Positions 28,905 through 63,206 of a stretch of 64,000 nucleotides of DNA are shown piece by piece. The notes under the pieces are model-generated. The model saw only the letters and a program-made list of their open reading frames with translations. It did not search any database and was not told the DNA's origin. The stretch is taken from positions 157,879-221,878 of IMG/VR virus record IMGVR_UViG_3300008954_003475; one strand, written 5' to 3'. A program made the translations under genes and the position numbers. Position 1 is the stretch's first letter, and the number at the start of each line of letters is the position of its first letter.

Positions 28905-28977
28905 AAGAAAACCCCGCACCTATCTGGTACAGGGTATTCGATGAAAAAACTATATTAGTTTATTTTATGTATGTTGC

Positions 28978-30486
28978 TTATAGCCTACGACTTGTACGAC
29001 TTGGCGGATATCCTGCTGCGGCTCTTTCTCGCGGAGTCATTCTTCTCCACTCTCTTTTTTGCTCCCTAGTCATATTATCCCAGTCTCTTCTTTGACCTCT
29101 TCTTGCCTCTTCTCTAAGATATCGCCGTTGTCTACGAGTTGTAGTACCTGAATCTCTAAGGTTGTTATTCACAGCAGATCTCTCTCTATCTGAAAAAGAA
29201 CTTCTCTGCTCCGGAATAAGCTGGCGTCTATAAGTAATAGGGATCCACAGCTTTGCGTCTACTGCTGCATTTCCAATCGGAGGTTTCGGATCTGTTGTAT
29301 TTTTCTTTTTATTGGTAAAGAAAAATACAGGAATCATTCTATTCTCTGCTGTATCATGAAATGCCCCTACGGAGCCATCCCTATCTCCGTTTGTCTTACC
29401 TTTAATCTCCGCTGCAGGATAGCCTCTAAAGCTACCACTCTGTCCCGCTTGTCCTGTCTGCCCTGCGCCACCAGACTCAGGCGTAAAGGTTGAAAGGGCA
29501 ATGCTGAAAGCACTTCCTGTATTGTCGTTATCATAAGCTGTTCTGACAGCAGCTTTGTTTGCGCCTCTTCCCAATACTGCAGTTGCAGTTGCTTTATCTA
29601 GAGGAAGATCTAATCCTGTTCCGTCAAATAATTTCGTTCTGGCCTCAAGAGGAAAGGACTCTGTTGCGGGGAACATGAGATAGCTTTCAAGCATCCTATC
29701 TCCATCTGTACCCTGTATCCCTCCGGTGTCCAGCCTTCCTGATAACATCCGTAAAGCTTCTTCTGCTGTTTCCGGAAGAGCACCCTTATCTGCTTTGGCC
29801 CAAGCCTGTTTAGATTTAGGTCCAAAATACCCATCGGGTACCAAATCTTTATCGCTATCATCTTTATACCCAAGCTCTTTAAGCTTCTCCTGAACAGCCT
29901 CTGCTGCATCTGATTTAAACAGCTTACCATCTTTCTTAAAAGGAGTAGCGGCCTGTGCAGCTTGTTGCTGACCGCCTTGCTGATCGCCTTGCTGATCGCC
30001 TTGCTGATCGCCTTGCTCCGAACTTCTACTGCTTAAGTGATGCCAGTCTCCAGGCCCGTCAGTCTTTTCATAAACAGCAGATGCCGCCGTGGAGCTCCAA
30101 CTCCCTTTAGGTAACTTTTTCCAGTCATAAAAGGAACCGCCACGGTTTCCTGCATTTAAACCCATGTAAATCCATCCTGACGGACCACCTGTACCTCCAT
30201 ATGCCTCTGCTTTGGCTTTGTCCCATTTCTCAACATCACCTCTGGTTAAACTATTTTCTGTATCAATGGTTAAAAGCTGCATCTTACCGGCTTGATTTCC
30301 CGTGCCTGCCCATACTGCATGTAGCTTTCCATCGGCCCCTTGCTTTACATGATAACTGTTGGGTTCTGGATCATCTTGTATACCCTTAGTAACAGCAGTC
30401 TTTACAAGCCCCTTTACAATCCTTGCCTGAGACTTGTAGCCTAACTTATAAAGCTCTTTAGCCAATGTGTTTAATTCATTATTCAT
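28978..30486 (-). CDS. Tag-family putative virion/ejection protein with peptidoglycan-binding-like domain and Arg-rich tail
   Basis: N-terminal ELNTLAKELYKLG...LVKTA; VQEKLKELGY..VPDGYFGPKSKQAW; GTGLDLPLD domain; Arg-rich C-terminus. Confidence 0.7.
   Translation of the reverse strand: MNNELNTLAKELYKLGYKSQARIVKGLVKTAVTKGIQDDPEPNSYHVKQGADGKLHAVWAGTGNQAGKMQLLTIDTENSLTRGDVEKWDKAKAEAYGGTGGPSGWIYMGLNAGNRGGSFYDWKKLPKGSWSSTAASAVYEKTDGPGDWHHLSSRSSEQGDQQGDQQGDQQGGQQQAAQAATPFKKDGKLFKSDAAEAVQEKLKELGYKDDSDKDLVPDGYFGPKSKQAWAKADKGALPETAEEALRMLSGRLDTGGIQGTDGDRMLESYLMFPATESFPLEARTKLFDGTGLDLPLDKATATAVLGRGANKAAVRTAYDNDNTGSAFSIALSTFTPESGGAGQTGQAGQSGSFRGYPAAEIKGKTNGDRDGSVGAFHDTAENRMIPVFFFTNKKKNTTDPKPPIGNAAVDAKLWIPITYRRQLIPEQRSSFSDRERSAVNNNLRDSGTTTRRQRRYLREEARRGQRRDWDNMTREQKREWRRMTPRERAAAGYPPSRTSRRL
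29974..30017. repeat. 12-bp tandem repeat encoding QQGD
   Basis: GCCTTGCTGATC x3 plus a partial copy. Confidence 0.85.
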
Positions 30487-30508
30487 TATTTATATCACCC
30501 TATTGATT

Positions 30509-32833
30509 TTAGCTTGGATTCTTTCCGCGCCACTGTTGTCTACGAGCATCTCTTGCGGCTCTATTGCGCTGTTGTATAGTTGTTTGCAGTGGCCCCGTTT
30601 GATTTTTCATAGCCTTTCTAACAGCTCGTCGTTCTTGATCTGTATGATAAGGAAGACCTTGTGCAAGCTGCTGTCTAAAGCGTACAGGCACCCACTTTCC
30701 TTCATAATTAAATAAAGGCTCATATCGTGTTGAGTTTGCCGGAAGATGTGTTGCCACAGTTCCCGCTCCTGCTCCGGAAACTCTCTCGGCAGGAATAACA
30801 GGAACATCGCCTGCTTGACCGCCGAGACCACCACCGAGTCCACCGCCGTCACCTCCGAGGTCTAACGGAGTACTAAATGCGGATAATGCAAAGTCAAGTC
30901 TTCCTTCTGCATTGTCTTTGTCATAAGCTTCTTCTACAGCCGTCTTGTTTGTTCCCTTGCCCAATACAGCAGCTGCGGTACCTGGATCCAAAGGAAGGTC
31001 CAAACCTGTTCCTTGAAACAATGCTGCTCTAGCCGGAAGATCTGCCTCTCCACTATATATAAGATACTTAGAAAGAGGCTTCTCTTCTCCGGTTTGTGCG
31101 GCTCCTCCAGCTTCGGCTGTATCGGAAGATCCACCGGCAGTTCTTTCTTCACTCTTACCTTCATCAAGTGCTTTTAAGGCCAAACCAGGAGATGATGGTC
31201 GGCCTCCTTTGTTTGCTTTGTTCCAAGCCTGTTGAGATTTTGTTCCCCAATCATTATCAATGTCTAACCTGTTTCCATCATCGTCTGTGAAACCAAGGTC
31301 ATTAAGCCTTCTTTGAACATCACCTATTGCAGAGTTACCCGCCGACCAACCGCTGGGAGATGATCCTGATCTTCTTGATGTTCCCGGGTCTGTTCCTGCT
31401 CCTGTTCCCGGGTCTGTTCCTGCTCCTGCAGAACCATCAGCAACTATTACCCAGCTACCGTCTTCCTTATCCGCAACACCAAAGCCAGGAACATCAGCCA
31501 TCATACTCTTGTATTGGCTGGCTGCTGACCAACCATCCATTTTTCTATATTCTGGATAAGCATGGTCGGTGTCTGGAAATCCATTTACCGGAATGCTATC
31601 AGATGAAGACGCGTTATTTACCTCATCGCTTACCCAGGTATCGGTTGCGCTATATCTCTTCGATGTCCACCTCGCATTACCTGTTAACTGTTTGTTAAAC
31701 ACAATACGGTGTAAATCGCCTCCGATGATTCGCCATCTAATGGGATTTGAACCCCATTCTTGATCAAGAGCATACTCACTTACTCCAGCGGCGACCCGTT
31801 CCTCCACAGTTGCTGCCTCAGAAACCGTCCCAGCAGCCGCATGTGCTGCGGCTTGTTCGGCAACTTGTCTGTCATTTTCTCTTACAAAGTCATCCCAATT
31901 TGTCTTGGCACGGTCGGCGGCTCGGGCAGCATCATCCTTGAAGGCACTTGAAGCTCCACTCAACATTATTGATTTAAACCAACTGCCGCTGGAATGGCCC
32001 GGCGTATAGGAGATCGCTGGCTCTTTCGTCGCCCCAGTGTCAAGCAGGCTCTCAGGGAGTCCTTCGCGGTAGTCGTCGGCGGCGAATGCGGCCCACACCG
32101 CTCTAGCAACCGCTGCTGCTTGCTCCTCATCACCCCCTGAATAAAAGTTCACGGTTGCCATTCTGTCGATTGCGTTAGTATATTCCTCAAGAGCTTTACC
32201 CAGCTTGTTCTGGCCTACGCTTCCATCCGAGGTGTAATTCCATGGAGCAGCAGTCTTTACAAGCCTCAAAGTCTCATTTGCTTGTTTTTCATACCCAGAC
32301 TTTCTCAAGGCTGTTGCAAGTTTGGTTAATTCTTTTTGTTCTGTATTCATAATGGTTCCTACCTTTGGTATCCTTCTTCTTTTTAATCTTCCAGTCTCCA
32401 AGAAACTAAAGTAATCTTCTGACTCAGTTTTAAACGGAATATTAATAGGTTTGGATCTTTCTCTTCTGTCAATATTAGATGGTGGTTTATCCTCATCAAT
32501 ATCAATAACCGATGGACCTCCAAAACCTGTGATAAATGATGCTTCAAAATCTTGCTGTTCGTAGCTAGACCTTGGTCTATAACCTTGCGCTCCGGGAGGA
32601 CTTCCGCCGGGAATGTCCGTTAAGCCCAAAGCTTGTTTGTGTATCTCTTGGAGTTTATTCTTTTTTGTCAACTTTTTGCCCTCGTCGGGTTCGTCGTCAG
32701 CATAATTATAAACTAACTCATGTGGATGAGAAGGAGTCCTTATAACATCCGGAGTCCTCTCTTTTATTACCGGTCCAGATTCATAATACGAAATTAAATC
32801 AAGGAGAGATAAACCCCTCTTCTTTTTTTTCAT
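30509..32833 (-). CDS. Tag-family putative virion/ejection protein with peptidoglycan-binding-like domain (possible internal start at 32350)
   Basis: Internal ELTKLATALRKSG...LVKTA; VQRRLNDLGF..IDNDWGTKSQQAW; GTGLDLPLD domain; basic tail. Confidence 0.7.
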   Translation of the reverse strand: MKKKKRGLSLLDLISYYESGPVIKERTPDVIRTPSHPHELVYNYADDEPDEGKKLTKKNKLQEIHKQALGLTDIPGGSPPGAQGYRPRSSYEQQDFEASFITGFGGPSVIDIDEDKPPSNIDRRERSKPINIPFKTESEDYFSFLETGRLKRRRIPKVGTIMNTEQKELTKLATALRKSGYEKQANETLRLVKTAAPWNYTSDGSVGQNKLGKALEEYTNAIDRMATVNFYSGGDEEQAAAVARAVWAAFAADDYREGLPESLLDTGATKEPAISYTPGHSSGSWFKSIMLSGASSAFKDDAARAADRAKTNWDDFVRENDRQVAEQAAAHAAAGTVSEAATVEERVAAGVSEYALDQEWGSNPIRWRIIGGDLHRIVFNKQLTGNARWTSKRYSATDTWVSDEVNNASSSDSIPVNGFPDTDHAYPEYRKMDGWSAASQYKSMMADVPGFGVADKEDGSWVIVADGSAGAGTDPGTGAGTDPGTSRRSGSSPSGWSAGNSAIGDVQRRLNDLGFTDDDGNRLDIDNDWGTKSQQAWNKANKGGRPSSPGLALKALDEGKSEERTAGGSSDTAEAGGAAQTGEEKPLSKYLIYSGEADLPARAALFQGTGLDLPLDPGTAAAVLGKGTNKTAVEEAYDKDNAEGRLDFALSAFSTPLDLGGDGGGLGGGLGGQAGDVPVIPAERVSGAGAGTVATHLPANSTRYEPLFNYEGKWVPVRFRQQLAQGLPYHTDQERRAVRKAMKNQTGPLQTTIQQRNRAARDARRQQWRGKNPS
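31380..31427. repeat. 24-bp direct repeat x2 encoding GAGTDPGT
   Basis: GTTCCCGGGTCTGTTCCTGCTCCT occurs twice in tandem. Confidence 0.85.
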
Positions 32834-32834
32834 A

Positions 32835-33962
32835 CTATCTCCTTACTAGGGGTGCTTCTCCGTTACTGAATATTCCAGAAAGAAGATCTGCCGCTTTCTC
32901 TATTCTGTCAAACTGTGCGTTAGCAACCGAATCAAAGGCTGCATCTTCATCAAAATCAATATCTTCATGCTGAACTCTAAAGGCGTCCTCTCTTGTTCGA
33001 CGCTCTCTGGCTTGTGCTATTCCACTATCTACATCTGTTAACAAAGCTAAAGCATCTTTTGGATTAGAAGGAAGAGCGCCCTTCCCTGCTTTAGCCCAAG
33101 CCTGCTTAGATCTTCTTCCAAAATCATTATCTGTTGCTAACTCTTTCTCTTCATTATCTGTATGCCCTAGCTCATTAAGTCTGACTTGAACATGCTCCCA
33201 TGTTGCGACCTCTGGCGTTTGAGCAGCACCTCCAGTCTCTCCTGTTCCAGACTGCGCTAAAGCAGTTCCTTGCGGAAGTTCTTTGCCCATTCTTTGAGCA
33301 TAATTCTGAATCTCACTCCAGTGACTAGCGAGATCTGGACTGGTTCTGATCCTCTCCTGATGCTCTTCGTCTCCCGATATATAAGAATCATACCATGACT
33401 TTGCTACCGCCCCAACATCAGAAGAACCTCCCGATGTTCCGCGACTTGTACCTGCCGACTCCATCCAATCAACAGTGTATTGAAGCATTCCTGCCATATC
33501 TCCTTCTTGTGGGTTTTCCTTTCCTGGGTAACCGGCCTTTGGTCCTAAAGATTTCCAATTTCGTGCTAAGTCGTCTCTTCCTATATGAGAAGTAAACGAC
33601 TCCCATCCTTTTTGCAAATCTCTACTCCATTTTGGATTCGACAAAGAAACCTCTACAAGATTAGCTTCATCAAACTGGGCCCATTTACCTTCTTTTGCTT
33701 TATCAAAAAAGAATTTCAAAATAGCTCTAAACACATTTACTCTATCACCTGTAGATAAATTTGCAGCGGTATCTGCCGCCGTCTTCAAGGCGCGAATAGC
33801 AGGCCTGAAGTTATCACCAACCTCTTCTTCATAATGCTCCCGATCCTCTTCTTCCGCCACTTCTTCCTGGGCAGTCTTTAAAAGATTGTCCAGCCTATCA
33901 GCTAGGTCTCTGTGACCAATGCTGTCTAAGTGATTTGCTAATTTAACTAATTCTTTTTGCAT
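32835..33962 (-). CDS. Tag-family protein with peptidoglycan-binding-like domain and conserved C-cap
   Basis: MQKELVKLANHLDSIGHRDLADRLDNLLKTA; VQVRLNELGH..TDNDFGRRSKQAW; DRIEKAADLLS. Confidence 0.75.
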   Translation of the reverse strand: MQKELVKLANHLDSIGHRDLADRLDNLLKTAQEEVAEEEDREHYEEEVGDNFRPAIRALKTAADTAANLSTGDRVNVFRAILKFFFDKAKEGKWAQFDEANLVEVSLSNPKWSRDLQKGWESFTSHIGRDDLARNWKSLGPKAGYPGKENPQEGDMAGMLQYTVDWMESAGTSRGTSGGSSDVGAVAKSWYDSYISGDEEHQERIRTSPDLASHWSEIQNYAQRMGKELPQGTALAQSGTGETGGAAQTPEVATWEHVQVRLNELGHTDNEEKELATDNDFGRRSKQAWAKAGKGALPSNPKDALALLTDVDSGIAQARERRTREDAFRVQHEDIDFDEDAAFDSVANAQFDRIEKAADLLSGIFSNGEAPLVRR

Positions 33963-33976
33963 TTTAATATCCTTAT

Positions 33977-34534
33977 TTATCTAGAAAAGGTGCCTGGAAC
34001 GTATGTTGTAAATTCACGCGACATTAACTCTGCTAACTTATCAATTCTTTCCTGTGCAGAATTGGCTGCAAAAACTTGATCAAAAGCTTCATCGCTATCG
34101 AGGACACCCTGCTCTTCCAATCGAGCTTCTCTGTCAGCATTGTAGGCCTCAAGAATCTCCTCTTTCGTACCAGTTTGTGCCGATGTTTCTTCAGGAACAG
34201 GTGGAGGCTCATCAGATGCTACCTGCCCCTCGGCATCCTCACCATATTGATTTACGTCTGGTTCGGCATAACCGCCGGGGTTTGGGTCTCGTTCAAGCGA
34301 AACTGAATCAAGATTCTTTTGTGCGATCCATGAATTTCTCAATCGTTGATTCCATGTCCCATCATCTTCACCCTCGTGCCGAGGATACTGCAGCTTTAAA
34401 TCCTCGATCTCTTCGGCAGTAGGAGCTACTGCACTACTTTGCGCACTCTTTAAAATTACATCCAACTTATCAGCCAAGTCTCCATGCCCGATGTTGTCTA
34501 AGTGATTTGCTAATTTAACTAATTCTTTTTTCAT
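33977..34534 (-). CDS. Tag-family acidic protein with conserved C-cap
   Basis: MKKELVKLANHLDNIGHGDLADKLDVILKSA; ERIDKLAELMSREFTT. Confidence 0.75.
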   Translation of the reverse strand: MKKELVKLANHLDNIGHGDLADKLDVILKSAQSSAVAPTAEEIEDLKLQYPRHEGEDDGTWNQRLRNSWIAQKNLDSVSLERDPNPGGYAEPDVNQYGEDAEGQVASDEPPPVPEETSAQTGTKEEILEAYNADREARLEEQGVLDSDEAFDQVFAANSAQERIDKLAELMSREFTTYVPGTFSR

Positions 34535-34548
34535 TTTAATTTCTCCAA

Positions 34549-35502
34549 TTATCTTCTGAAAACTCCCGTAACATTAGTTGTAAATTCACGAGACATTAAC
34601 TCTGCTAACTTATTGATTCTATCATGAACCGATTCTGAAGCTTCCTTCTCTACTTCAGGATCAATAGGGCTAAACTCTACATCTAATTCTTCATCAGAAG
34701 AGCCTTCAGAGTCCTGCCAGCCACCAGTGTCACCACCTTCTGATCTCAACCTCTCTAAAATTTTATCCTTCAACTCTACCATTCTCATTATAAAGCTAGG
34801 GCCTTTTGGTTCTTTTCCGGCATCGGCAAACTCTTTGGCCGCCGCTCCTCTCGCCTCATCTTGAGCCTGTCTATCAAGAGCTTTGTCATCCGCACTCTTT
34901 GTCAAACTTAAAGAATCACTTCCCTCTTTTTTATTCAAGATACCATCAAGCCTATCGGCCAAGTCTCTGTGACCTATGTTGTCCAAATGATTTGCTAATT
35001 TAACTAGCTCACTTTGCATTTTATAGCTTCCTTTAGATCCCAGTTTGATAACATTATCAATACGATTCTTTTTATTAGTAGTATTTTTTGAAGCTTCTAA
35101 CTGCAATCTTTGATTGATCATTCCCTCTGCCGCTCTCTCTGCCGCTTCTGCAACACCTTCGCCGCCTGGAAACTCTCCTTTCTCTGCATCAAAATCTTCT
35201 ATATGACCATATTCATGAACCAAAGTTTTTGCTATTTGAGCTACCAAATACTTTATTTCTTCATCAGTAGCGTTTGGAGGAAACTTGTTTATAACAAAGT
35301 GTATCTTATCTATCTTCCCATCATTGTTTACATCTTCGGAAGAAACATAAGCTGCGGCGTTTGGATCGCCGGAAGCAGGTGCCGGACCCCATTCGCACTT
35401 ATTGCTATTCAACATAGACATTATCTCGGGCTTTAAACCAAGAGTTTGAAGACCCTGTTTGACCTTCGGCCAATATGGAGGTTGCGCTGTTTTCTTCAAC
35501 AT
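34549..35502 (-). CDS. HExxH metallopeptidase-like domain fused to a tag-family module
   Basis: MLKKTA; LVHEYGH followed by EGVAEAAE; internal MQSELVKLANHLDNIGHRDLADRLD; C-cap DRINKLAELMSREFTT. Confidence 0.7.
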   Translation of the reverse strand: MLKKTAQPPYWPKVKQGLQTLGLKPEIMSMLNSNKCEWGPAPASGDPNAAAYVSSEDVNNDGKIDKIHFVINKFPPNATDEEIKYLVAQIAKTLVHEYGHIEDFDAEKGEFPGGEGVAEAAERAAEGMINQRLQLEASKNTTNKKNRIDNVIKLGSKGSYKMQSELVKLANHLDNIGHRDLADRLDGILNKKEGSDSLSLTKSADDKALDRQAQDEARGAAAKEFADAGKEPKGPSFIMRMVELKDKILERLRSEGGDTGGWQDSEGSSDEELDVEFSPIDPEVEKEASESVHDRINKLAELMSREFTTNVTGVFRR

Positions 35503-38500
35503 GTTTTATACTCTCCTAATAATAGATTATTATTCAAAGAAAATTTATCAAATAGGTTATATAATTCTTCTGATTCCTTTATCATATCTTGATCAACCAA
35601 AAGATTATACAATGGAACAATCTTTTGCATACCCAGCTTTGTTAATCCAAACTCTTCCATAATTTCAGCAAATCTAAGATTAACAATCTTTGCCCTGATA
35701 TCCTTTAACCTGCTCTTGCTTATACCACTTTGCCTAAGAGCTCTCTCGTTGCCGCCCAAATACCTTAGAAGGCCTGTTACTGTGTCTTGTTCTGGACCGC
35801 CATAAGGAAGCTCTGCTTCGTGAAAAACTTCTTTAACTAACCTTTCACCTTCAAGATACTTATCTCTGCTTAATTCAACGTCTCTTTTTTCTTGATCAAG
35901 CCTTCTGGCATCTCTTTCTCTCTCTCTTCTTGTGCTTATTATTGCACCATTTTGGGCTGGAGTCAAAGAATAATTGTATCCACCCTTCTTTTGTATCGGC
36001 ATTAAAGACTTAACTTTTTCAATACTTTTATTATCTGCTGGAATCCTAAATACATTTAATCCCAATATAGTATCGTCCTCTGCTTCTAACTTCTCCGGAA
36101 GCTCTTGATATATCCTTTTTCTTTTCTTTAAATTCTGTATAGAATTTCCACCTGACTTCAATAAATAAACATATTCCATACCCATTCTTTTTGCGGTCTT
36201 CATAGCGTTAACAATAATTAAATATGGATAATTTTGAGAAATAATCTCAAGATGTTTCTTGGAATCTTTCAGTTCAGGCTCTGAATATTTTTCTTTTAAG
36301 CCATGAAGACTTGTCGGTATTAGCCCAAGGTTATCCAGCCTATCCCTTATCTCTTTTGCTCTATCTCTATAAAGCTCCGAAGCTTTAGCATAAGCTTCGG
36401 CCTTCTCACTTTCGCTAGACTTATAACTTCCACTTATTTTCTCAAACTCTTTGGCCTTACTAGAATATTCTAAAAAGTCTACTGAATCCATTATCTCTAT
36501 AGTCTTTTTGGTAAAATCATCTGGCGAATCTTCCAACCTTGCCTCAAGCTCAGGAGTAAGGCTTTCATCAGCACGAAGCTCTTTCAGTTCCACATAAGCC
36601 CCGCCCTCTCCGTCTTTATAATTCAACTCAAACCTAGCACCTGTATTGCTTATGTAAGATATAGACCTATAAGCTTTCTTTGTTGGAGGCATCCTGTTAA
36701 AAACCCTGTCCAATACAACCGGATAATCTGATTGTATTTGTTCTATAAGAAGTTTCTCTTCAGGAAAAGAGGCAAGGGCCCAGGCCGAAGTAAACCCGGA
36801 ACTACCCAGGTTAGTATGTCCAACAAAATCTGCAGCACTAATGTTGTTTTTGTTTATGTCATACATTATCGGGGTCGGTGTTTCGTTGTCTTGCGTTAAC
36901 TCATATCTATCTACATCTGCATCTGTCAACTCCATTGGTCTTTGCTGACTTTGATAACCAGAATATTTTATCTTAGAATCAGGAAATGCTTCCATGTCTA
37001 TATCATTATGAGATCTGCTATGTATATCTTGTGCTTCATCCAGATGATCAATCTTTTCCAATCTTTTTAAAGCATACCTAAAAGGCTCGGGTATCAAAGC
37101 ATATTCTGATCCCCTGCTATACCTTGAGTAAAAATGATCAAAGTATGTTACTGAATCTTTGTTGCTTATAACAGCTTCCAAAACCTTTCTGTCTATCCTT
37201 CTTCTTAGATCACTAACTAGACGACCTGTAAATTTATAGCTGCTATCCAAAAAACACTTGTAATATTCTTCTATATTTTCTTCTATTTTCTTTGCAAATT
37301 CTATGGTCAACTCTGTTTTTAATTCTTCATCATCTATGTGATACAAGCTATCAGTTAATTTTTCACAGGCAGATTTGTCCATTCTGTTTAATATTAAATT
37401 GAAAACTTTTCTTTTTCCATCATCATCTAATTCTTGAGCAAAATATTTAAAAGACTCTGCCAACTTAGCTGGATCCATAGCTTCCAACACAGATCCCTCA
37501 TCTACACTTTCTCTAAAAATCTTATTCAGATCCAACTGTCTAGCTGTATCGTTCACTCTTCCTTCTGGATTGTTCATATGATTTATAAAATCATTAGGAC
37601 TTACTGTCAACAAGCTTCTATAGGCTACCTCTACATATTTATCGCGTATACTCTCTAGATCAACTGGCGCTCCAAACCAAGTTCTTATTCCAAGAAATCT
37701 GTTAGGCATCTTCTCTGCCATAAGAAGAAACACACTATCTGCTAAGTCTGGAAACTTTTCATTTAATTTATTATAAAAGAATGGATTAAAAATATTATTC
37801 TCTAAAAACTCAACATCATCTGATTCTTTTGCCATTTGCAACATATGATTAACAATTGCCTTCTCATGTTTTGGCATATTTTTATCTATTGCTAAATCAT
37901 ATACTCTAGTTAAGTTGCCAGAACTTATAGCCTCCTTCACTTCATCTATATATATCTTCGTACCCCTTTCGCCTTGTGGACTCTGACGACTTGAATTGAA
38001 TATAATTCTATCTAATCTATTTAATCGATCCTGTCCCAATATACTTTCAAAAGCATTTATAAGACCCTCTGACATTTCTTCTTTCTCATAGAGATAATGA
38101 TTATTGTCAAACAAATCAATAAACAAGTCTATTTTATCTCTTGTCGCATCAAAGACTGCTTGCTTTGAATTTAAATCAAAACGACTAATTCCAGATAAGG
38201 TGTTATTTAAATCATTAGACTCTCTCCAACCGGACTCTCCTCCGCTCATTCTATCTGCTACATTGTTTATCATAAAAATATATTTATTTACAAAATATGG
38301 CTCAAGTTCTCTTACGCTAAAGAGCCTATAGTTACTATGAGAAGGCCCTTCGTCTGTCTTTGCATCTAAAGCTTCTTTTACTTTTCCGTAAGAAAAAATT
38401 GTATTTAAAACAACCTGACCTTTCTGACCATGCCTGCCTGATGACAAATGCCTAATTGCTGTTGGGAACTTATCTCCATAAAGATCACTGTGCAATATTC

Positions 38501-38780
38501 CAGAAAATAGATCTTCTGCGTATCCTATTCTTTTTTGTTCTTGCATGTTTGCGTTTAATATCCAAAAGATTATAGCACCAACATGCCTTATCCCATGAAT
38601 ATCTCCATCCAAAAGCTCTTGAAAGGCTGCCTCTAAATCTTCACCTTCGCCCTGCTCTTCCTCTGATTCAAAATCAGAGAAGCTGCTTGATAACATATTT
38701 TGAACAAATTTTGCTTCCAAAGTTTCATTCGCTACTTTGAATAAAGTAAAAATATTATTTAATCTAGAATTTTTAATCAT
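35496..38780 (-). CDS. Large (1094 aa) putative internal virion protein
   Basis: LFKVA near the N-terminus, LLIEQIQSD motif, divergent tag-like C-terminus; heads the tag-family cluster. Confidence 0.65.
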   Translation of the reverse strand: MIKNSRLNNIFTLFKVANETLEAKFVQNMLSSSFSDFESEEEQGEGEDLEAAFQELLDGDIHGIRHVGAIIFWILNANMQEQKRIGYAEDLFSGILHSDLYGDKFPTAIRHLSSGRHGQKGQVVLNTIFSYGKVKEALDAKTDEGPSHSNYRLFSVRELEPYFVNKYIFMINNVADRMSGGESGWRESNDLNNTLSGISRFDLNSKQAVFDATRDKIDLFIDLFDNNHYLYEKEEMSEGLINAFESILGQDRLNRLDRIIFNSSRQSPQGERGTKIYIDEVKEAISSGNLTRVYDLAIDKNMPKHEKAIVNHMLQMAKESDDVEFLENNIFNPFFYNKLNEKFPDLADSVFLLMAEKMPNRFLGIRTWFGAPVDLESIRDKYVEVAYRSLLTVSPNDFINHMNNPEGRVNDTARQLDLNKIFRESVDEGSVLEAMDPAKLAESFKYFAQELDDDGKRKVFNLILNRMDKSACEKLTDSLYHIDDEELKTELTIEFAKKIEENIEEYYKCFLDSSYKFTGRLVSDLRRRIDRKVLEAVISNKDSVTYFDHFYSRYSRGSEYALIPEPFRYALKRLEKIDHLDEAQDIHSRSHNDIDMEAFPDSKIKYSGYQSQQRPMELTDADVDRYELTQDNETPTPIMYDINKNNISAADFVGHTNLGSSGFTSAWALASFPEEKLLIEQIQSDYPVVLDRVFNRMPPTKKAYRSISYISNTGARFELNYKDGEGGAYVELKELRADESLTPELEARLEDSPDDFTKKTIEIMDSVDFLEYSSKAKEFEKISGSYKSSESEKAEAYAKASELYRDRAKEIRDRLDNLGLIPTSLHGLKEKYSEPELKDSKKHLEIISQNYPYLIIVNAMKTAKRMGMEYVYLLKSGGNSIQNLKKRKRIYQELPEKLEAEDDTILGLNVFRIPADNKSIEKVKSLMPIQKKGGYNYSLTPAQNGAIISTRRERERDARRLDQEKRDVELSRDKYLEGERLVKEVFHEAELPYGGPEQDTVTGLLRYLGGNERALRQSGISKSRLKDIRAKIVNLRFAEIMEEFGLTKLGMQKIVPLYNLLVDQDMIKESEELYNLFDKFSLNNNLLLGEYKTC

Positions 38781-39235: not shown

Positions 39236-39267
39236 ATAAAAAAAGCCCGACCAAAATGGTCGGGCTT
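39236..39267 (-). terminator. Rho-independent terminator
   Basis: AAGCCCGACCA-loop-TGGTCGGGCTT stem followed by T7 on the minus strand. Confidence 0.88.
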
Positions 39268-40775: not shown

Positions 40776-42380
40776 TTACGAGTTATCGTTAGTGATCGAT
40801 TCATATATTGCAACTTCCGTAGTTAACAACGTGCCACTAGCTGATGCTGCATTTTCCAAAGCTGATCTCACAACTTTTACTGGATCAATAATTCCGCTCT
40901 TTAACATATCATCAACATAACAATCATTAAAGGCATCGTATCCACTAAACATTTTTTTAGAATTGATTATTTTTTCCATATAAGAAAAGTGTTCAATTCC
41001 AGCATTTGTTAAAATCTGAACAAAAGGTGCCCGTATTGATTTCATTATTACATCAACACCAATCAACTCTTCTGTAATAAGAGAGGTATCATTTTTTAAT
41101 TTTTGCAATACAGGAATACAATGCAAAAGAGCCGCACCGCCGCCGGGGACTATACCCTCTTCTACAGCAGCCTTAACAGCGTTTATAGCATCTTCCACTC
41201 GATCCTTCCTTTCTTTTACCTCTGCCTCTGAAATACCACCGACTTTAAACACGGCCACAGAACCAGATAGTGCTGACAACCTTTGCTTTATAGAGGCTAT
41301 CTCATAAGTCTCAAGGCTCTGCTCCAGCTGTACCCTTAGAGTCTTAATGCGTTCATCTATCTCATCTTGAGGACAAACCCCATCTATGATAGTTGTATCG
41401 GCTCTTGTGACAAGCACTCTTCTTGCAGTACCTAAATGCTCAACAGATATATTTCTTAGTGGACAACCTGCTTCATTAGTAAATAAAGTTGTTCCACAAA
41501 CCGTTGCAATATCTGAAAGCATACCTCTTCTTATATCTCCGAACCCTGGCGCTCTTACGGCACAGGAGTGTAATGCTCCACGCGCCTTGTTAAGAACAAG
41601 GGTCTGCAAAGCCTCCCCTTCAGTAGTCTGAGATATAACCAACAGGGGTCTTGCCTGTTCTGAAACTGCTTCTAATATAGGAAGTATATCATATGTATTA
41701 GATATCCTTCCATCATAAACCAAAATTAATGGATTATCAAACTCTACAGTAAGCTTTTCTAGATTTGTAGCAAACGTGGGCGTTATATATCCTTTATCAA
41801 AGGTCATACCTTCCGTATATACTACAGCTGTTTCAAAGCCTGGAGCATCTTCTACAGATATCATTCCATGATCTCCAACAGCCGAAACAGCTTCTCCAAT
41901 AGTTGTGCCAAGACCTACATCATTATTTGAAGATACAATCGCTACATTCCTTATAGTCTCTTCATCATCAACAGACTTGCTAATATCCTTTAACTTTTTA
42001 ACAACTGTATTAACAGCTTTGTCTATCCCTCTTTTGATCAAGACCGGATTGTGACCAGCTGCAACCATTTTAGCCCCCTCTGTAAAAATAGATTGAGCTA
42101 AAACAGTTGCAGTGGTTGTTCCGTCACCTGCCGATGCATTTGTGGACGAAGCTACACTCTTAATGAGTTCTGCCCCCATGCTATGCATCTTATCCTCTAG
42201 AGTTATAGATCTAGCGACTGTAACTCCATCCTTGGTAATGAGTGGTGGGCCAAAGCTTCTTTCTATAGCTGCATGACGCCCCTTCGGTCCAAGCGTTGCC
42301 TTCACAGCATTAGCCAATACATCAAGCCCATCTTTAAGACCATTTCTTGCATCAGCGCTAAACTTAACTTCCTTGCCCAC
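40776..42380 (-). CDS. groEL: GroEL-like chaperonin
   Basis: [53 protein letters not shown]; lacks the GGM tail. Confidence 0.95.
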
Positions 42381-43864: not shown

Positions 43865-45334
43865 ATGAAAAAAGATCTAAAATTATTATCATCAAAGTTA
43901 AAAGAGTATGGGGAATACGAAGCCTCCTTGTCTGTGAATGAATTGATAAAAAGTATAAGCGAAATACGCGATATATCGTTATTAAAAACTGCCGAAACCT
44001 CCGTGGCATCAGGCGATGTAGGAAGTGTGACTCAAGACTCAACAAACCCAGGTTTGGCAGGGTTTATTGAAGCTACTAGTCAGGAGCCGACCGTGACTGC
44101 TCCAACAAACCCAGGTTTGGCAGGGTTTATTGAAGCTACTAGTCAAGAGCCACAACCCCAACAAGCCTCGCAGTCTTTTGAAGATAATCCAGAGTTTAAA
44201 GCATGGTACAAAATCCTAGAAGATTATGAAAAAGTCCCAGGACGAGTAGAGAAGTTTCATGAAATATCAGACAAAATAATGTCAACAGTACTATCTCCTA
44301 TTTTAGGCCATAAAAAAGACCTAGTAGCGGAAGGCGCTCAAGAACCAAGCGAAGCCCAAAAGAATCATATGGCTTCAAAGATGAGAGAACAAGGCAGAAG
44401 CGTCAATACAGCCATGGAAATGTCAGAAGAAATGCAAGGTGGCGAAGAAGGCCCTTTGTTTATGACTGCATCAAACTTTTATATTAAACAAAAAAAAATT
44501 GCATCAACAAACAATTATCTAGACAACTACCTTTCAAGTATTGATCTGATGAATCATGACTTTAAATTAATATCTCTCGCAGCAAGCGAAGTAAACCCGA
44601 TGGGTATGTTGGAAATGATGGACAAAGAAGAAAGAGGACTATTAGGAGCGGTTGACCCAAGAACAGGGCAAACAAGCTGGGGAGAATTAGCTGGGGCTAA
44701 CAAGATCAAGCCAGCAGGCGTTAAGCCTGGACTTCTCGGCAGAGGAATGGCTGTTATCGGCATTTTGTTTTCTGGACCATTATTGGTTAAAAATTTAGTT
44801 GAAGCTATAAGAAATGGAAATACAATTGTTAATGAATTACCCTTGGAAAAATATGAAATATCAATAACTAGCGCACTCACCGGCCTTAGTGCAAATAAAC
44901 TTATTGGAAAAATAAGAAAAGCAATAAGAGAAAATCAAGAAAATCCAGAAGCTTTATATGAAATACTTGAAATTGCTAAAACATTATCTGCATATTGGCT
45001 TGATGTTATTTTCATGGTAACAAATGCATTAATGGCAATCATAGATATTCTAACACTAGTCGCTATGTTCGCAACGGCCCCACTTCCGATAGTGTCTGCT
45101 GCGGCTGGAGGCATTGGTATGCTTCTATCTATGGGCCTAATGGGATTAGAATTTGGTGCAGAATCTATGGTTCATAGTTATTGGGATGCTCAAAAACTAA
45201 AGATAAAGAAAATTGCAGAAAAAAATATAATATCCATGACAGGCGGGGAAGAAAAATCAGGTCTAATTGCCGGGGCCGAAGCGCCCACTATAACGTCTGA
45301 TACCTTTCAAGTGGCCGCATCATTAACAGGTTAG
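43865..45334 (+). CDS. Tag-family protein with C-terminal hydrophobic hairpin
   Basis: Only large plus-strand ORF; MKKDLKLLSSKLKEYG...LLKTA; two long hydrophobic segments near the C-terminus. Confidence 0.75.
   Translation: MKKDLKLLSSKLKEYGEYEASLSVNELIKSISEIRDISLLKTAETSVASGDVGSVTQDSTNPGLAGFIEATSQEPTVTAPTNPGLAGFIEATSQEPQPQQASQSFEDNPEFKAWYKILEDYEKVPGRVEKFHEISDKIMSTVLSPILGHKKDLVAEGAQEPSEAQKNHMASKMREQGRSVNTAMEMSEEMQGGEEGPLFMTASNFYIKQKKIASTNNYLDNYLSSIDLMNHDFKLISLAASEVNPMGMLEMMDKEERGLLGAVDPRTGQTSWGELAGANKIKPAGVKPGLLGRGMAVIGILFSGPLLVKNLVEAIRNGNTIVNELPLEKYEISITSALTGLSANKLIGKIRKAIRENQENPEALYEILEIAKTLSAYWLDVIFMVTNALMAIIDILTLVAMFATAPLPIVSAAAGGIGMLLSMGLMGLEFGAESMVHSYWDAQKLKIKKIAEKNIISMTGGEEKSGLIAGAEAPTITSDTFQVAASLTG
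44040..44145. repeat. 43-bp direct repeat, period 63 bp (TNPGLAGFIEATSQEP x2)
   Basis: CAACAAACCCAGGTTTGGCAGGGTTTATTGAAGCTACTAGTCA at 44040 and 44103. Confidence 0.9.
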
Positions 45335-52052: not shown

Positions 52053-52138
52053 TGGTAGGGACGGTGGGACTCGAACCCACAAGGTCTTTGACCGACAGAT
52101 TTTAAGTCTGTTGCGTATACCAATTCCGCCACATCCCC
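52053..52138 (-). tRNA. tRNA-Leu(UAA), type II with encoded CCA
   Basis: GGGGATGTGGCGGAATTGGTATACGC-ACAGA-CTTAAAA-TCTGT-variable arm-GTGGGTTCGAGTCCCAC-CGTCCCTACCA. Confidence 0.95.
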
Positions 52139-53181: not shown

Positions 53182-53502
53182 TTAGTCCAAATATTCTGAT
53201 ATAGCTTCTTTTATAAGATCTAAATCTTCAACGTCAAGAGCTTCAATTAAAATGTCAGATATTCCTGCTTTAAATTCTTCATTTTTTGAATTTACAAGAA
53301 TACTTTTCAAATCCTCTAGAGAAGAATACTTAGCATTAGGTATTGATTCGTCTTCATTAAAGTATACTTCATCACAAGAAGGTTCACTAAGATCGCCCCC
53401 TACGCTATACAGTTTATGAATTAAAGAATCAATTTCTAAAGATTCTTTAATCAACTCCATTTCAAACAATTCTTTAGATAATTTTATCAGGTCTTCTAAC
53501 AA
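53182..53502 (-). CDS. Small acidic protein with divergent tag-family N-terminus
   Basis: LEDLIKLSKELFEMELIKESLEIDSLI; TTG start with GGAG RBS. Confidence 0.6.
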   Translation of the reverse strand: MLEDLIKLSKELFEMELIKESLEIDSLIHKLYSVGGDLSEPSCDEVYFNEDESIPNAKYSSLEDLKSILVNSKNEEFKAGISDILIEALDVEDLDLIKEAISEYLD

Positions 53503-60446: not shown

Positions 60447-61499
60447 TTAGAATGGTATATTTTTCTTAGAAGTACAAGGTATAGTTGCAACTAATCCTTT
60501 TGTGTATCTAGAGTTTATTTTGCTATCTGGCTCACCAATAAGCTCTTTTAATCCTTTAAACTTTTCTGCATAGTCAACAAGATAAAGCGCATATTCCTTT
60601 TTAAAATATTTCATATCTGAAAACTTTTTAAACAAAGAATGAAAATGCGTAACCATAGTCTTTAAAGTGTTTATAGAAGAAATCTTCTTTCCATAAATTG
60701 TTTCAAGCTCAATTATTTTATTGCCATATTCTTCGTAATTTATATTTTTTGTATCAACATACAGTTTAAAGATATAATCTGTTAGTTTTGGTCCAAAATT
60801 AATACTGTATCTATCTGAATATTTATAGGCCCTAAGAGCGCCAAAGACCCTCATTGCAATTGACGTTCTTTCGAATGGCTCTTGGCTGTTTATGCGTAAT
60901 TCAAAATTAGAAAATGCATCATCAATTCTATCATCATAATACAATACTCCATTGTGCCATGCGACTGCACAGTTGATGAAGTCAAATGATGATAGCAATT
61001 CTTCTACAGAAGATATAGGCTTCTTGATAAATTGAATCTCGCCACCATAGACGGGATGTATCTTTCTGTGTGTAGAAGATCGAAAGGAATTAGCCCAACC
61101 AGTTGATTTGCATAATCCGTCCAAGCCTAGTGGACCACCAATAAAAGTTTTTTGATTATAGGTTGGGTCAGGAGATAAACTTTTTGCTTTAGATCCTAAC
61201 TGATCCTCTTTCTTTCCCACTAGCCAATGATGTTCGTGAGCATTATTATGAATTGGATTCGTATCATCAAACCAAATGTCAATATCACCGAAAGAATCTA
61301 TCATTGCATTTTTTGGAGTTGTTACCAAAGAACGCTTTAAGGTTTCCCATCTAAGATCTGTATCATGAAGATTGAAAGCGCGATACAGAGATAACATTGA
61401 CCCGCCAGCAATTATTGGATCAAGAGAAAGCAGTTTGCCAGGAGGCAGAATAAACTCTACAAACCAATTTATACGATCATTTTCGATGGTTTTAATCAC
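60447..61499 (-). CDS. Putative nucleotidyltransferase (CCA / polyA-polymerase head-like)
   Basis: IIAGGS, GDIDIWF (GG + DxD), IQFI, SFDFINCAVAW. Confidence 0.6.
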   Translation of the reverse strand: MIKTIENDRINWFVEFILPPGKLLSLDPIIAGGSMLSLYRAFNLHDTDLRWETLKRSLVTTPKNAMIDSFGDIDIWFDDTNPIHNNAHEHHWLVGKKEDQLGSKAKSLSPDPTYNQKTFIGGPLGLDGLCKSTGWANSFRSSTHRKIHPVYGGEIQFIKKPISSVEELLSSFDFINCAVAWHNGVLYYDDRIDDAFSNFELRINSQEPFERTSIAMRVFGALRAYKYSDRYSINFGPKLTDYIFKLYVDTKNINYEEYGNKIIELETIYGKKISSINTLKTMVTHFHSLFKKFSDMKYFKKEYALYLVDYAEKFKGLKELIGEPDSKINSRYTKGLVATIPCTSKKNIPF

Positions 61500-62494: not shown

Positions 62495-62716
62495 TTATCT
62501 TGCAGAATTTATATCATATTTGTTATACAAATCATTTTTACCAATAATGCTTCCACTGTAATCTGGGTTTACTACCTTTCTGTTGTTCCAATAAATTGTT
62601 TCAACAACATACTTTTCTATATCTGGATAATAAGTCAAAACACGGTGTCCGTAATCTTTATCGTCTAAAGCACGAACTTCTTTCCCAGCCAAACTATCTG
62701 AATCAAACATTATCAC
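62495..62716 (-). CDS. Hypothetical protein
   Basis: 73-aa ORF. Confidence 0.55.
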   Translation of the reverse strand: MIMFDSDSLAGKEVRALDDKDYGHRVLTYYPDIEKYVVETIYWNNRKVVNPDYSGSIIGKNDLYNKYDINSAR

Positions 62717-63206
62717 ACCCTTCTATGATAAGTAAATCAATTTCATCGGCAGCTTTGATATGTCCCATCGAATCTAAATAATTAGAAAGTTTTATAAGGC
62801 TGTGCTTAACCTTTGAAGTAATATCGTTAGGCCGGGAAGAACTATCTTTATTACCCAGAAGAATTGCATGATCTTCTTTTATTCTGGTCAATATTTCGCA
62901 AGGAACGCCAGCCTCTTCAAACCACTTTACTTCACGCTTGCTATGTGCAAGCATTTCTTTTTCCGGAAACCCTTTTTCTTCAAGTTCTTTATGCTCTTTT
63001 AAAAGTTTCTTTTTAATTTTATCGGAAAGAAAAGGAACCGCCTCTTCTTTTTCAAATTCAAAATGACATTCGGGGCAACATGAAGTTTCCTCTTTCGCCT
63101 GTTTTTTTTCGCTGCATGATTCACATGCGGCTTTATTTAAAGAATCAACACTCCAGGTGTATGGTTCGTTCAAATAGGTTGCAAGATTTGTAATTCTATC
63201 AGTCAT
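62703..63206 (-). CDS. Cys/His-containing protein with C-terminal tag-family motif
   Basis: CESC, CCPECH, EH..HSKRE..EDH; SLIKLSNYLDSMGHIKAADEIDLL. Confidence 0.7.
   Translation of the reverse strand: MTDRITNLATYLNEPYTWSVDSLNKAACESCSEKKQAKEETSCCPECHFEFEKEEAVPFLSDKIKKKLLKEHKELEEKGFPEKEMLAHSKREVKWFEEAGVPCEILTRIKEDHAILLGNKDSSSRPNDITSKVKHSLIKLSNYLDSMGHIKAADEIDLLIIEGCDNV

What the first reader, a model, noticed from the sequence alone, without database searches (positions are those of the whole stretch)
28978..38780. Family of unrelated cargo proteins sharing an amphipathic 'KLA..LD..G...A..LD..LK[TS]A' tag: candidate capsid-targeting and maturation system
Seen in sequence: the same ~30-aa helix motif occurs in 28978-30486 (ELNTLAKELYKLGYKSQARIVKGLVKTA), 30509-32833 (ELTKLATALRKSGYEKQANETLRLVKTA), 32835-33962 (ELVKLANHLDSIGHRDLADRLDNLLKTA), 33977-34534 (ELVKLANHLDNIGHGDLADKLDVILKSA) and 34549-35502 (ELVKLANHLDNIGHRDLADRLDG..LTKSA, plus N-terminal MLKKTA). 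Outliers are 43865-45334 (DLKLLSSKLKEYG..LLKTA), 53182-53502 (DLIKLSKELFEM..EIDSL) and 62703-63206 (SLIKLSNYLDSMGHIKAADEIDLL); 35496-38780 begins LFKVA. The sequences after the tag differ: PG-binding-like, HExxH, TM hairpin, acidic disordered. Established: T4 internal proteins use an N-terminal capsid-targeting sequence, and phiKZ head proteins carry propeptides removed by the prohead protease. Inference: this tag is a portable packaging signal and K-[TSV]-A marks the maturation cut, loading a toolkit of ejected proteins. I know of no named domain for it.
Basis: partly seen in the sequence, partly recalled or inferred. Interest (0 to 1): 0.85.

Follow-up and report, generated by a model that had tools for sequence, protein, structure and literature searches.

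The report
Portable helix-hairpin tag on phage proteins
A 30-residue helix-turn-helix motif with no name in domain databases heads a cluster of related proteins in an uncultured marine huge phage and occurs in about 2,000 other metagenomic protein clusters. It ends in the same short sequence that recurs at domain boundaries of the phage's own head-maturation protease, so it is probably a tag for loading and trimming capsid-internal proteins, though this is unproven.

Summary
The motif is real. Five copies sit in one terminator-bounded operon (28978-35502) and a sixth in 62703-63206. The tagged proteins are not unrelated: they are mosaic paralogs that also share a PG_binding_1-like segment, a 360-aa region and a conserved C-terminal tail.

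The motif is an unnamed, portable module. A 34-column profile finds 1,993 representative proteins in 1.84 billion. In the best 167, 56% of copies are at the N-terminus, 35% internal and 9% at the C-terminus, with up to 3 copies per protein. Pfam, PHROGs, PDB and Foldseek find nothing.

Walking upstream on the same contig found a phage-G-like head module. It includes a 1,139-aa prohead-protease polyprotein. 'LLKxAQ[DE]' is invariant at one of its domain/linker boundaries in 16 homologs, and related 'hLKxA[ED]' sites are largely conserved at another. The same sequence ends the hairpin. Two further motif genes lie next to the terminase gene.

The HExxH protein has a conserved in-frame internal start exactly at the motif, as in nested protease/scaffold genes.

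Verdict: the portable-tag reading is well supported, the cleavage reading has circumstantial support, and capsid targeting remains inference. A plain self-association or docking module is the main rival.

The parts
28911..28935 (-). Intrinsic terminator closing the operon
   Evidence: 10-bp stem with 6 GC pairs and a T tract, just after the stop of 28978-30486.
28978..30486 (-). 502-aa motif protein: divergent N-terminal hairpin, PG_binding_1-like segment, Arg-rich C-terminus
   Evidence: Pfam PG_binding_1 scores 20.8 bits at residues 193-228, below the cut-off of 23.
30394..30486 (-). Hairpin motif copy (divergent), ends LVKTA
30509..32833 (-). 774-aa paralog of the 502-aa protein; motif at residues 162-195 after an in-frame Met with AGGA 6 nt upstream
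   Evidence: Homologs in L002 carry the motif at the same position, about residue 172.
32249..32350 (-). Hairpin motif copy (divergent, internal), ends LVKTA
32835..33962 (-). 375-aa motif protein: N-terminal hairpin, second LKTA at residue 59, PG_binding_1-like segment, conserved C-terminal tail ending VRR
33870..33962 (-). Hairpin motif copy (canonical), ends LLKTA|QEE
33977..34534 (-). 185-aa protein: hairpin, hypervariable acidic linker and conserved C-terminal tail (nt 33980-34069)
34442..34534 (-). Hairpin motif copy (canonical), ends ILKSA|QSS
34549..35502 (-). 317-aa protein: N-terminal HExxH domain (nt 35083-35502; HEYGH at 35203-35217), hairpin, acidic region and C-terminal tail (34552-34641)
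   Evidence: Alignment A3 has H96, E97, H100, D103, E115, E119 and E122 invariant. In the AF2 model, residues 4-140 have pLDDT 80-93. 65 homologs were found, none with a name.
34927..35019 (-). Hairpin motif copy starting at a probable nested in-frame start (ATG 35017-35019, GGAAG upstream)
   Evidence: All 7 HExxH fusions examined have GGAGA, AAGGA or GGAAG 6-7 nt before this ATG, as true starts do. The Gly codon there is GGA in 6 of 6 cases, against 38% genome usage.
35496..38780 (-). 1,094-aa protein of the same operon; no motif, only LFKVA at residues 13-17; absent from the syntenic clusters of L002 and L004
38785..39195 (-). 136-aa first gene of the operon, conserved in position in related phages
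39243..39267 (-). Strong intrinsic terminator upstream of the operon
   Evidence: 11-bp stem with 7 GC pairs and a T tract.
62703..63206 (-). 167-aa paralog of the HExxH-plus-motif module; HExxH is lost; hairpin lies near the C-terminus (nt 62718-62810)

Best explanation
The motif is a roughly 30-residue helix-turn-helix hairpin with consensus M-x-K-E-L-[IV]-K-L-A-N-x-L-D-x-x-G-x-x-x-x-A-D-x-L-D-x-h-h-K-x-A. It acts as a portable assembly tag in a large clade of uncultured marine huge phages.

In this phage it heads a late-operon-like cluster of mosaic paralogs. I infer that these are head-internal proteins of the ejection or core type. Proposed mechanism:
(1) The hairpin, possibly together with the conserved C-terminal tail, docks the protein to other hairpins or to the scaffold/core of the prohead.
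(2) The phage-G-type prohead protease, itself a 1,139-aa polyprotein, cuts after [LIV]-[LIV]-K-x-A, before Q, E or D. This sequence closes the hairpin and also marks the protease's own domain/linker boundaries.
(3) A small HExxH (zincin-like) domain is delivered to the same place, because its gene is fused in frame to a hairpin protein. That hairpin protein is also made alone from a nested start, as in lambda C/Nu3 or herpesvirus UL26/UL26.5.

Shown: the motif, its portability, the paralogy, the shared site, the head module and the nested-start sequence signature.

Inferred: virion location, docking and cleavage.
For: Motif and portability.

Tandem clusters of motif genes in other contigs. Conserved position of the cluster in related 131-325 kb contigs.

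Head module on the same contig: TerL (GpA_ATPase); portal (phrog_16240, E 5e-52), MCP (phrog_2522, E 1e-69) and a polyprotein N-terminus matching a head maturation protease (phrog_18299, E 1.4e-11). By tblastn that N-terminus matches phage G gp19 (E 1e-24) and annotated prohead proteases. Gene order matches phage G.

Shared site: GLLKxAQ[DE] is invariant in 16 polyprotein homologs and is followed by a hypervariable linker. ILKQAE and LLKxA[ED] precede a second hypervariable stretch.

Site enrichment: 11 occurrences against 1.6 +/- 1.2 expected; [LIV]LK.AQ 3 against 0.09. The strict tetrapeptide is found only in the polyprotein, p755 and the cluster among 24 head-region proteins.

Motif genes beside the head genes: a 167-aa protein two genes before TerL, a 366-aa protein with two copies, and a marginal copy in p184 after the portal.

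Nested start.

Two-copy protein P0036 folds as a compact four-helix unit in AF2 (pLDDT 82, pTM 0.64).

The DNA pattern is absent from 185,579 cellular genomes.

One of 70 motif proteins hits a PHROG 'virion structural protein' family (E 5.7e-7).
Against: There are no virion data, and no cultured relative carries the motif.

C-terminal, internal and repeated copies do not fit a simple cleavable N-terminal signal.

The hhKxA site follows only about half of the copies in the wider family. The canonical family also has a similar string, 'LVKEAD', inside the hairpin, so part of the enrichment may reflect amphipathic-helix composition.

The two canonical window copies are paralogs, so the site counts are not independent.

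The operon is flanked by nucleotide-metabolism genes, not structural genes.

Conserved hhKxA strings in the MCP N-arm are uninformative.

The zincin assignment rests on conserved residues only; Foldseek found no significant match.
Confidence: 0.45

Rival explanations
1. The hairpin is a general self-association or docking module: two hairpins pack into a four-helix bundle. It assembles the operon's proteins, and unrelated enzymes in other phages, into hetero-oligomers that work in the infected cell or at the cell wall, not inside the capsid. The K-x-A ending is just the end of an amphipathic helix.
For: Copies occur at N-termini, C-termini and internal positions, with 2-3 copies in 46 of 167 proteins. 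The two-copy 95-aa protein P0036 is predicted to be compact (pTM 0.64). Three cluster proteins have PG_binding_1-like segments. One motif protein hits a PHROG endolysin family (E 5e-4) and one carries a GNAT domain. The operon sits among metabolic genes. The site is missing after about 45% of copies.
Against: This does not explain why the same LLKxAQ[DE] heptapeptide is invariant at a domain/linker boundary of the prohead-protease polyprotein. It does not explain why motif genes flank TerL and the portal. It does not explain the protease-plus-nested-partner gene layout.
Confidence: 0.3
2. The small acidic hairpin proteins (33977-34534 and the nested product of 34549-35502) are themselves scaffolding or core proteins, and the HExxH domain is a second maturation protease tethered to them. 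On this reading the hairpin and the C-terminal tail are scaffold-scaffold and scaffold-shell contacts rather than a cargo tag.
For: The proteins have conserved ends, a hypervariable acidic middle and high helix content. The in-frame nested start is like lambda C/Nu3. p190, next to the protease polyprotein, is similarly acidic, has a hhKxA site at residue 35 and ends in a hairpin-like string.
Against: The head module already holds a protease polyprotein with a long C-terminal part that could be the scaffold. The motif also sits on large, clearly non-scaffold proteins and enzymes. The cluster is 60 kb or more from the MCP gene.
Confidence: 0.15
3. The hairpin is a divalent-cation or partner-binding regulatory element. 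It has an invariant Asn and three Asp on one face next to the Gly turn, and it switches the activity of the attached domains.
For: N10, D13, G16, D22 and D25 are the most conserved polar positions. Several family members carry an EF-hand-like segment right after the motif.
Against: There is no match to any known metal-binding family. The His residues of the window subfamily are not conserved in the wider family. This reading is compatible with the other explanations rather than exclusive of them.
Confidence: 0.07

Closest known systems
T4 capsid-targeting sequence (CTS) of internal proteins IPI-III and Alt, removed by prohead protease gp21 (reviews PMC3012670, PMC9026906)
   Same: A short shared N-terminal sequence sits on several otherwise different proteins encoded in a plastic gene cluster. 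It is followed by a protease consensus site that is also used on the core proteins.
   Different: The tag here is about 30 aa and folds as a helix-turn-helix hairpin, against about 10 aa in T4. The candidate site is hhKxA|Q/E/D, not (L/I)xE. The protease is of the phage G gp19 type inside a 1,139-aa polyprotein. Copies also occur at C-termini and in tandem. Nothing has been shown experimentally.
Propeptides of head and ejection proteins in phiKZ-like giant phages (SPN3US, 201phi2-1), cut by the gp175-type protease at S/A/G-x-E (PMC5694885, PMC7411985)
   Same: A huge phage with paralogous families of putative head-internal proteins, whose N-terminal parts would be removed at a consensus site.
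   Different: There is no sequence relation (PHROGs gave no hit). The site and the protease family differ, and no shared structured tag is described for phiKZ-like propeptides.
Nested protease/scaffold genes: lambda C/Nu3, Mu I/Z, herpesvirus UL26/UL26.5 (my own knowledge)
   Same: A protease domain is fused in frame to an assembly protein that is also translated alone from an internal start. The shared part brings the protease into the procapsid. Herpesvirus sites are also cut after Ala.
   Different: The N-terminal domain here is an HExxH domain, not a serine protease. A separate canonical prohead protease exists in the genome. Internal initiation is inferred only from conserved SD+ATG.
Bacillus phage G (Donellivirus) head module; gp19 head maturation protease (PMC12484599)
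   Same: The protease domain matches at 34% identity (E 1e-24). The gene order portal ... protease ... MCP is the same.
   Different: Phage G gp19 is 300 aa and has no long C-terminal polyprotein part. No hairpin motif was detectable in cultured phages.
Pfam PG_binding_1 (PF01471)
   Same: Three cluster proteins contain a V-x-x-x-L-x-x-L-G-[YFH]...D-x-x-[FW]-G...Q-A-W segment that scores just under the Pfam cut-off. The first helix of the hairpin, L-x-x-x-L-x-x-x-G-[HY], looks like the first helix of that domain.
   Different: The score is below the gathering threshold (20.8 against 23 bits). The hairpin itself gives no Pfam match and lacks the DG-x-FG loop and the third helix.
Minimal zincin/gluzincin metallopeptidases (HExxH plus a downstream Glu)
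   Same: HExxH with an Asp three residues later and three invariant Glu in the next helix. The predicted fold is a small beta sheet followed by two long helices.
   Different: There is no significant sequence or fold match to any peptidase family.

Membership tests
T4-type CTS / internal proteins | Shared sequence at the extreme N-terminus of several head-internal proteins | tested here: inconclusive
   56% of 220 copies are N-terminal, but 35% are internal and 9% C-terminal. In the window, 3 of 6 are N-terminal and 2 more start at probable nested starts.
T4-type CTS / internal proteins | Removal by gp21 at (L/I)-x-E | tested here: not met
   The hairpin ends in hhK[TS]A followed by Q, E or D, not LxE. 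The protease is related to phage G gp19 and Rhodococcus E3 gp77.
T4-type CTS / internal proteins | Proteins present in mature heads and ejected | not testable with these tools
   The phage is uncultured and there is no proteome.
Prohead-protease substrates in general | The same consensus site is present in the protease/scaffold itself and in the substrates, at domain boundaries | tested here: met
   GLLKxAQ[DE] is invariant in 16 polyprotein homologs before a hypervariable linker, and the same string ends the hairpin. Enrichment is 11 against 1.6 expected. This is a sequence signature only; cleavage was not observed.
Nested protease/scaffold gene pair (lambda C/Nu3 type) | In-frame internal start with its own ribosome-binding site, giving a C-terminal co-product | tested here: met
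   All 7 HExxH fusions have ATG preceded by GGAGA, AAGGA or GGAAG at 6-7 nt, like true starts of motif genes. The Gly codon is GGA in 6 of 6 against 38% usage. Translation itself was not tested.
Nested protease/scaffold gene pair (lambda C/Nu3 type) | The N-terminal domain is the prohead protease | tested here: not met
   The prohead protease homolog is a different gene (L044:10001-13420). The HExxH domain has no match to any prohead protease.
Zincin metallopeptidase | HExxH with a third ligand on a following helix; zincin fold | tested here: inconclusive
   HExxH, D103 and E115/E119/E122 are invariant in 14 sequences. The model is confident for residues 4-140, but Foldseek's best E is 0.33 ('Matrixin', BFVD) and there was nothing in PDB.
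Pfam PG_binding_1 | Score above the gathering threshold | tested here: not met
   20.8 bits against a cut-off of 23 in 28978-30486, and no hit in the other two. Similarity among the three proteins is significant.
Any named domain for the hairpin | Match in Pfam-A, PHROGs, PDB sequences or PDB/BFVD folds | tested here: not met
   Only sub-threshold chance-level hits were seen (DUF1902, RNase_3_N).

The most novel reading that the evidence does not exclude
A self-associating 30-residue alpha-alpha hairpin is the general encapsidation tag of a whole clade of uncultured marine huge phages. Any protein carrying it, at either end, is recruited to the prohead core and then released by the phage-G-type protease at hhKxA|Q/E/D. 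A zincin-like enzyme is co-loaded through a nested-gene arrangement. This would be a structured, transferable packaging signal, different in kind from the short T4 CTS.
Probability: 0.3. Interest if true: 0.8.

Novelty: new variant of a known kind. Interest (0 to 1): 0.62.

Why it matters
If true, the motif would mark, from sequence alone, the set of proteins that a large and abundant group of uncultured marine huge phages carry inside their heads and probably inject. This content is otherwise invisible because none of the proteins has a known domain. It would also define the specificity of a prohead protease family (phage G gp19 type) for which no cleavage rule is known. It would add a structured tag to the few known encapsidation signals, which is useful for loading foreign proteins into capsids. 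Even if the capsid reading is wrong, a domain-sized module present in about 2,000 protein clusters and absent from Pfam deserves a family definition.

Tried and rejected
- DNA and protein searches of cultured phages with the region, the 375-aa and 1,125-aa proteins and a two-copy motif protein found nothing useful.
- Pfam, PHROGs and PDB-sequence searches of cluster proteins found nothing beyond a sub-threshold PG_binding_1 hit.
- Foldseek with the HExxH-protein model and with the two-hairpin model found no match at E<0.3.
- One of 70 motif proteins hit the PHROG family 'virion structural protein', but I could not tell which. Ten candidates were tried and none matched.
- The 'moraphage' lineage (PMC12619734) was considered as the source. 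No link could be shown, and its description does not mention the marker genes seen here.
- A shared promoter for the operon and the head genes was sought (TATATTAA and sigma-70 scans). No convincing signal emerged.
- Conserved hhKxA strings in the MCP N-arm were found but set aside, because the whole MCP is conserved.
- Chance or low-complexity origin of the motif is rejected by the profile scores.
- His-based metal binding is rejected because the His residues are not conserved outside the window's subfamily.
Full report
**Source and setting**

The window is the last 64 kb of IMG/VR contig UViG_3300008954_003475 (221,878 bp; contig coordinate = window + 157,878). The same proteins occur on a 277,573-bp contig. 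Nearly all genes are on the minus strand.

Nothing in the INPHARED phage collection resembles the region at the DNA or protein level. The window's neighbours of the cluster are nucleotide- and amino-acid-metabolism and replication genes. These include purA, a DHH phosphoesterase, IMPDH/GMP reductase, MoxR plus VWA, an M16 peptidase, SbcCD, an FtsK-like ATPase, a sigma factor, GroEL, glutamine synthetase, asparagine synthase and FEN.

**The observation**

The motif is present as described in five adjacent genes. An HMM built from these five copies also recovers the copy in 62703-63206, which was not used to build it.

- 43865-45334 gets no HMM hit.
- 53182-53502 is marginal (iE 0.003 among 125 proteins).
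- 35496-38780 shares only a pentapeptide.

The five genes, plus a 136-aa and a 1,094-aa gene upstream, form one unit. It is bounded by two strong intrinsic terminators at 39267-39243 and 28935-28911.

**The proteins are paralogs, not unrelated cargo**

By blastp:
- 28978-30486 and 30509-32833 share 363 residues (E 4e-38).
- These two and 32835-33962 share a PG_binding_1-like segment, which Pfam scores at 20.8 bits against a cut-off of 23.
- 33977-34534 matches the C-terminal half of 34549-35502 (E 7e-19).
- 62703-63206 matches the HExxH-plus-motif part of 34549-35502, although its HExxH is lost.

Metagenomic homologs show a fixed architecture. The hairpin is followed by a hypervariable acidic linker and then a conserved C-terminal tail, R-I-[ND]-K-L-A-E-L-M-x-x-E-F...[FV]-x-R.

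**A widespread, unnamed, portable module**

A 34-column profile (A1) searched against 1.84 billion representative proteins gave 1,993 proteins at E<=1e-3 and 92 at E<=1e-10.

The 167 proteins I hold contain 220 copies:
- 124 are N-terminal, usually beginning at Met1.
- 76 are internal.
- 20 lie within 8 residues of the C-terminus.
- 46 proteins have two or three copies.

The wider consensus is h-h-K-L-A-N-x-L-D-x-K-G-h-x-K-E-A-D-x-L-D-x-h-I. L5, L12, D13, G16, D22 and D25 are nearly invariant.

Pfam on 70 members found one GNAT domain and nothing for the motif. PHROGs gave single hits, including 'virion structural protein' (E 5.7e-7) and 'endolysin' (E 5e-4), and I could not tell which members produced them. 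PDB sequence and fold searches found nothing.

The KLANHLDxxGH variant occurs in 10 IMG/VR contigs of 45-316 kb and in none of 185,579 cellular species genomes. Motif genes typically lie in tandem, for example four adjacent genes with six copies in L005. The cluster keeps its place between GroEL and purA in related contigs of 131, 232 and 325 kb.

**Structure**

AlphaFold2 predicts two helices for the motif: residues 158-175 and 179-191 in the 317-aa protein, with pLDDT about 65.

A 95-aa metagenomic protein consisting of two copies and a linker is predicted from its single sequence as a compact four-helix unit (pLDDT 82, pTM 0.64). I take this as a hint that hairpins pack against each other. 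Contacts were not available to me.

**The HExxH protein and a nested start**

Residues 4-140 of 34549-35502 form a confidently predicted small domain (pLDDT 80-93). H96, E97, H100, D103, E115, E119 and E122 are invariant. There are 65 homologs, all unnamed, on contigs up to 325 kb. No peptidase family matches, so 'zincin-like' is an inference from the residues.

In all seven fusions examined, the hairpin begins at an in-frame ATG. It is preceded at 6-7 nt by GGAGA, AAGGA or GGAAG, the same context as true starts of motif genes. The Gly codon that forms this sequence is GGA in 6 of 6 cases, against 38% usage. 30509-32833 has the same feature.

In L004 and L019 the HExxH gene is separate from the hairpin gene. 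The layout is that of nested protease/scaffold pairs.

**The head module and the shared site**

Walking upstream on the same phage passed a 2,121-aa protein, Pol III alpha, a second chaperonin, RecA and a primase. It then reached a head module in this order:
- TerL (GpA_ATPase)
- portal (phrog_16240, E 5e-52)
- five unknown genes
- a 1,139-aa protein
- five unknown genes
- MCP (phrog_2522, E 1e-69)

Residues 99-243 of the 1,139-aa protein match a head maturation protease family (phrog_18299, E 1.4e-11). By tblastn they also match Bacillus phage G gp19 (E 1e-24), Rhodococcus phage E3 'prohead protease' and BcepSaruman 'head maturation protease'. The gene order matches phage G. A phage G study annotates gp19 as the head maturation protease (PMC12484599).

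The strict string [LIVMF][LIVMFA]K[TSV]A occurs in only two of 24 proteins of this region: three times in the polyprotein and once in p755. Elsewhere it is concentrated in the window cluster.

In an alignment of 16 polyprotein homologs (48-100% identity):
- G-L-L-K-x-A-Q-[DE] at about residue 693 is invariant and is immediately followed by a hypervariable Pro/Gly/Ala linker with indels.
- I-L-K-Q-A-E (about 964) and L-L-K-x-A-[ED] (about 981) are largely conserved and precede a hypervariable acidic stretch.

The hairpins of the window end in NLLKTAQEE, VILKSAQSS, GLVKTAV and RLVKTAA. HExxH proteins begin M-[LI]-x-K-x-A-Q-P, and the polyprotein begins M-[FIL]-K-K-[IV]-[CS].

Across 125 proteins (35.8 kaa) of this phage:
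- [LIVM][LIVM]K.A[QED] occurs 11 times against 1.6 +/- 1.2 in shuffles.
- [LIV]LK.AQ occurs 3 times against 0.09.

Further hits lie about 35-45 residues from the N-termini of p190, the gene after the polyprotein, and of 43865-45334.

Caveats:
- The two canonical window copies are paralogs.
- Shuffles ignore helical periodicity.
- The canonical family has a similar string inside the hairpin.
- In the wider family the site follows 57% of N-terminal and 49% of internal copies.

**More motif genes next to head genes**

A 167-aa protein with an N-terminal copy lies two genes before TerL. A 366-aa protein with two copies lies 6 kb further up. p184, two genes after the portal, has a marginal copy (iE 0.002).

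**Interpretation**

The best reading is a structured, portable assembly tag. It brings a set of mosaic proteins and a zincin-like enzyme into the prohead, and the prohead protease separates it from them at hhKxA|Q/E/D.

What is shown is sequence-level only: the module, its spread, the paralogy, the shared conserved site, the nested-start signature and the genomic link to head genes. Virion location, docking and cleavage are inferred.

The main rival is a general self-association module unrelated to capsids. That reading explains C-terminal and tandem copies better. It leaves unexplained the shared site in the protease polyprotein.

In function the system resembles the T4 CTS/internal proteins and phiKZ-type propeptides. 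It is not a member of either family, because the tag, the site and the protease all differ.

Noticed in passing
window 34927-35019 and 32249-32350; L002, L009, L010, L011, L013, L014: In-frame internal ATG with a Shine-Dalgarno sequence sits exactly at the start of the hairpin inside longer ORFs. This suggests nested genes that give a long and a short product.
   Followed up: partly
window 62703-63206; P0116: This paralog of the HExxH-plus-hairpin module has lost HExxH. A 323-aa metagenomic variant (P0116) has a GNAT acetyltransferase domain inserted between the two parts.
   Followed up: partly
window 60447-61499: A 350-aa protein has a precomputed Pfam hit to PF26128 (Gad2), a family named after an anti-Gabija protein. 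A homolog sits near GroEL in L019.
   Followed up: no
window 52053-52138 (-): A single tRNA-Leu with anticodon TAA.
   Followed up: no
window 40776-42380 and L042:4998-6653: The phage encodes two Cpn60/GroEL-family chaperonins about 60 kb apart.
   Followed up: no
L017:11360-17725 (just upstream of window position 1): A 2,121-aa Ser/Asp/Glu-rich protein with no family match, followed by a DnaE-type Pol III alpha.
   Followed up: no
L043 and L044 (contig about 110-139 kb): The head module has the same gene order as Bacillus phage G. However, the protease gene is extended to 1,139 aa with conserved blocks separated by hypervariable linkers.
   Followed up: partly
L019:17857-20182: In a 325-kb relative, the IMPDH gene appears split by a Hint_2/NUMOD3 element (intein or homing endonuclease).
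   Followed up: no
window 30392-30407 and 32247-32262: The DNA encoding LVKTA at the end of the two divergent hairpins is identical over 16 nt (cttgtaaagactgctg), although the proteins are only 32% identical overall.
   Followed up: no
P0035, P0038, P0041, P0043: In several metagenomic proteins a C-terminal hairpin is followed by a Lys-rich stretch and an EF-hand-like loop, and sometimes by a zinc ribbon.
   Followed up: no
L044:13411-13983 (p190): This acidic 190-aa protein lies right after the protease polyprotein. It has MVKEAQ at residues 31-36 and a C-terminal string resembling the hairpin (LNKMASDFSNNGDKFAADM), which is below HMM significance.
   Followed up: partly
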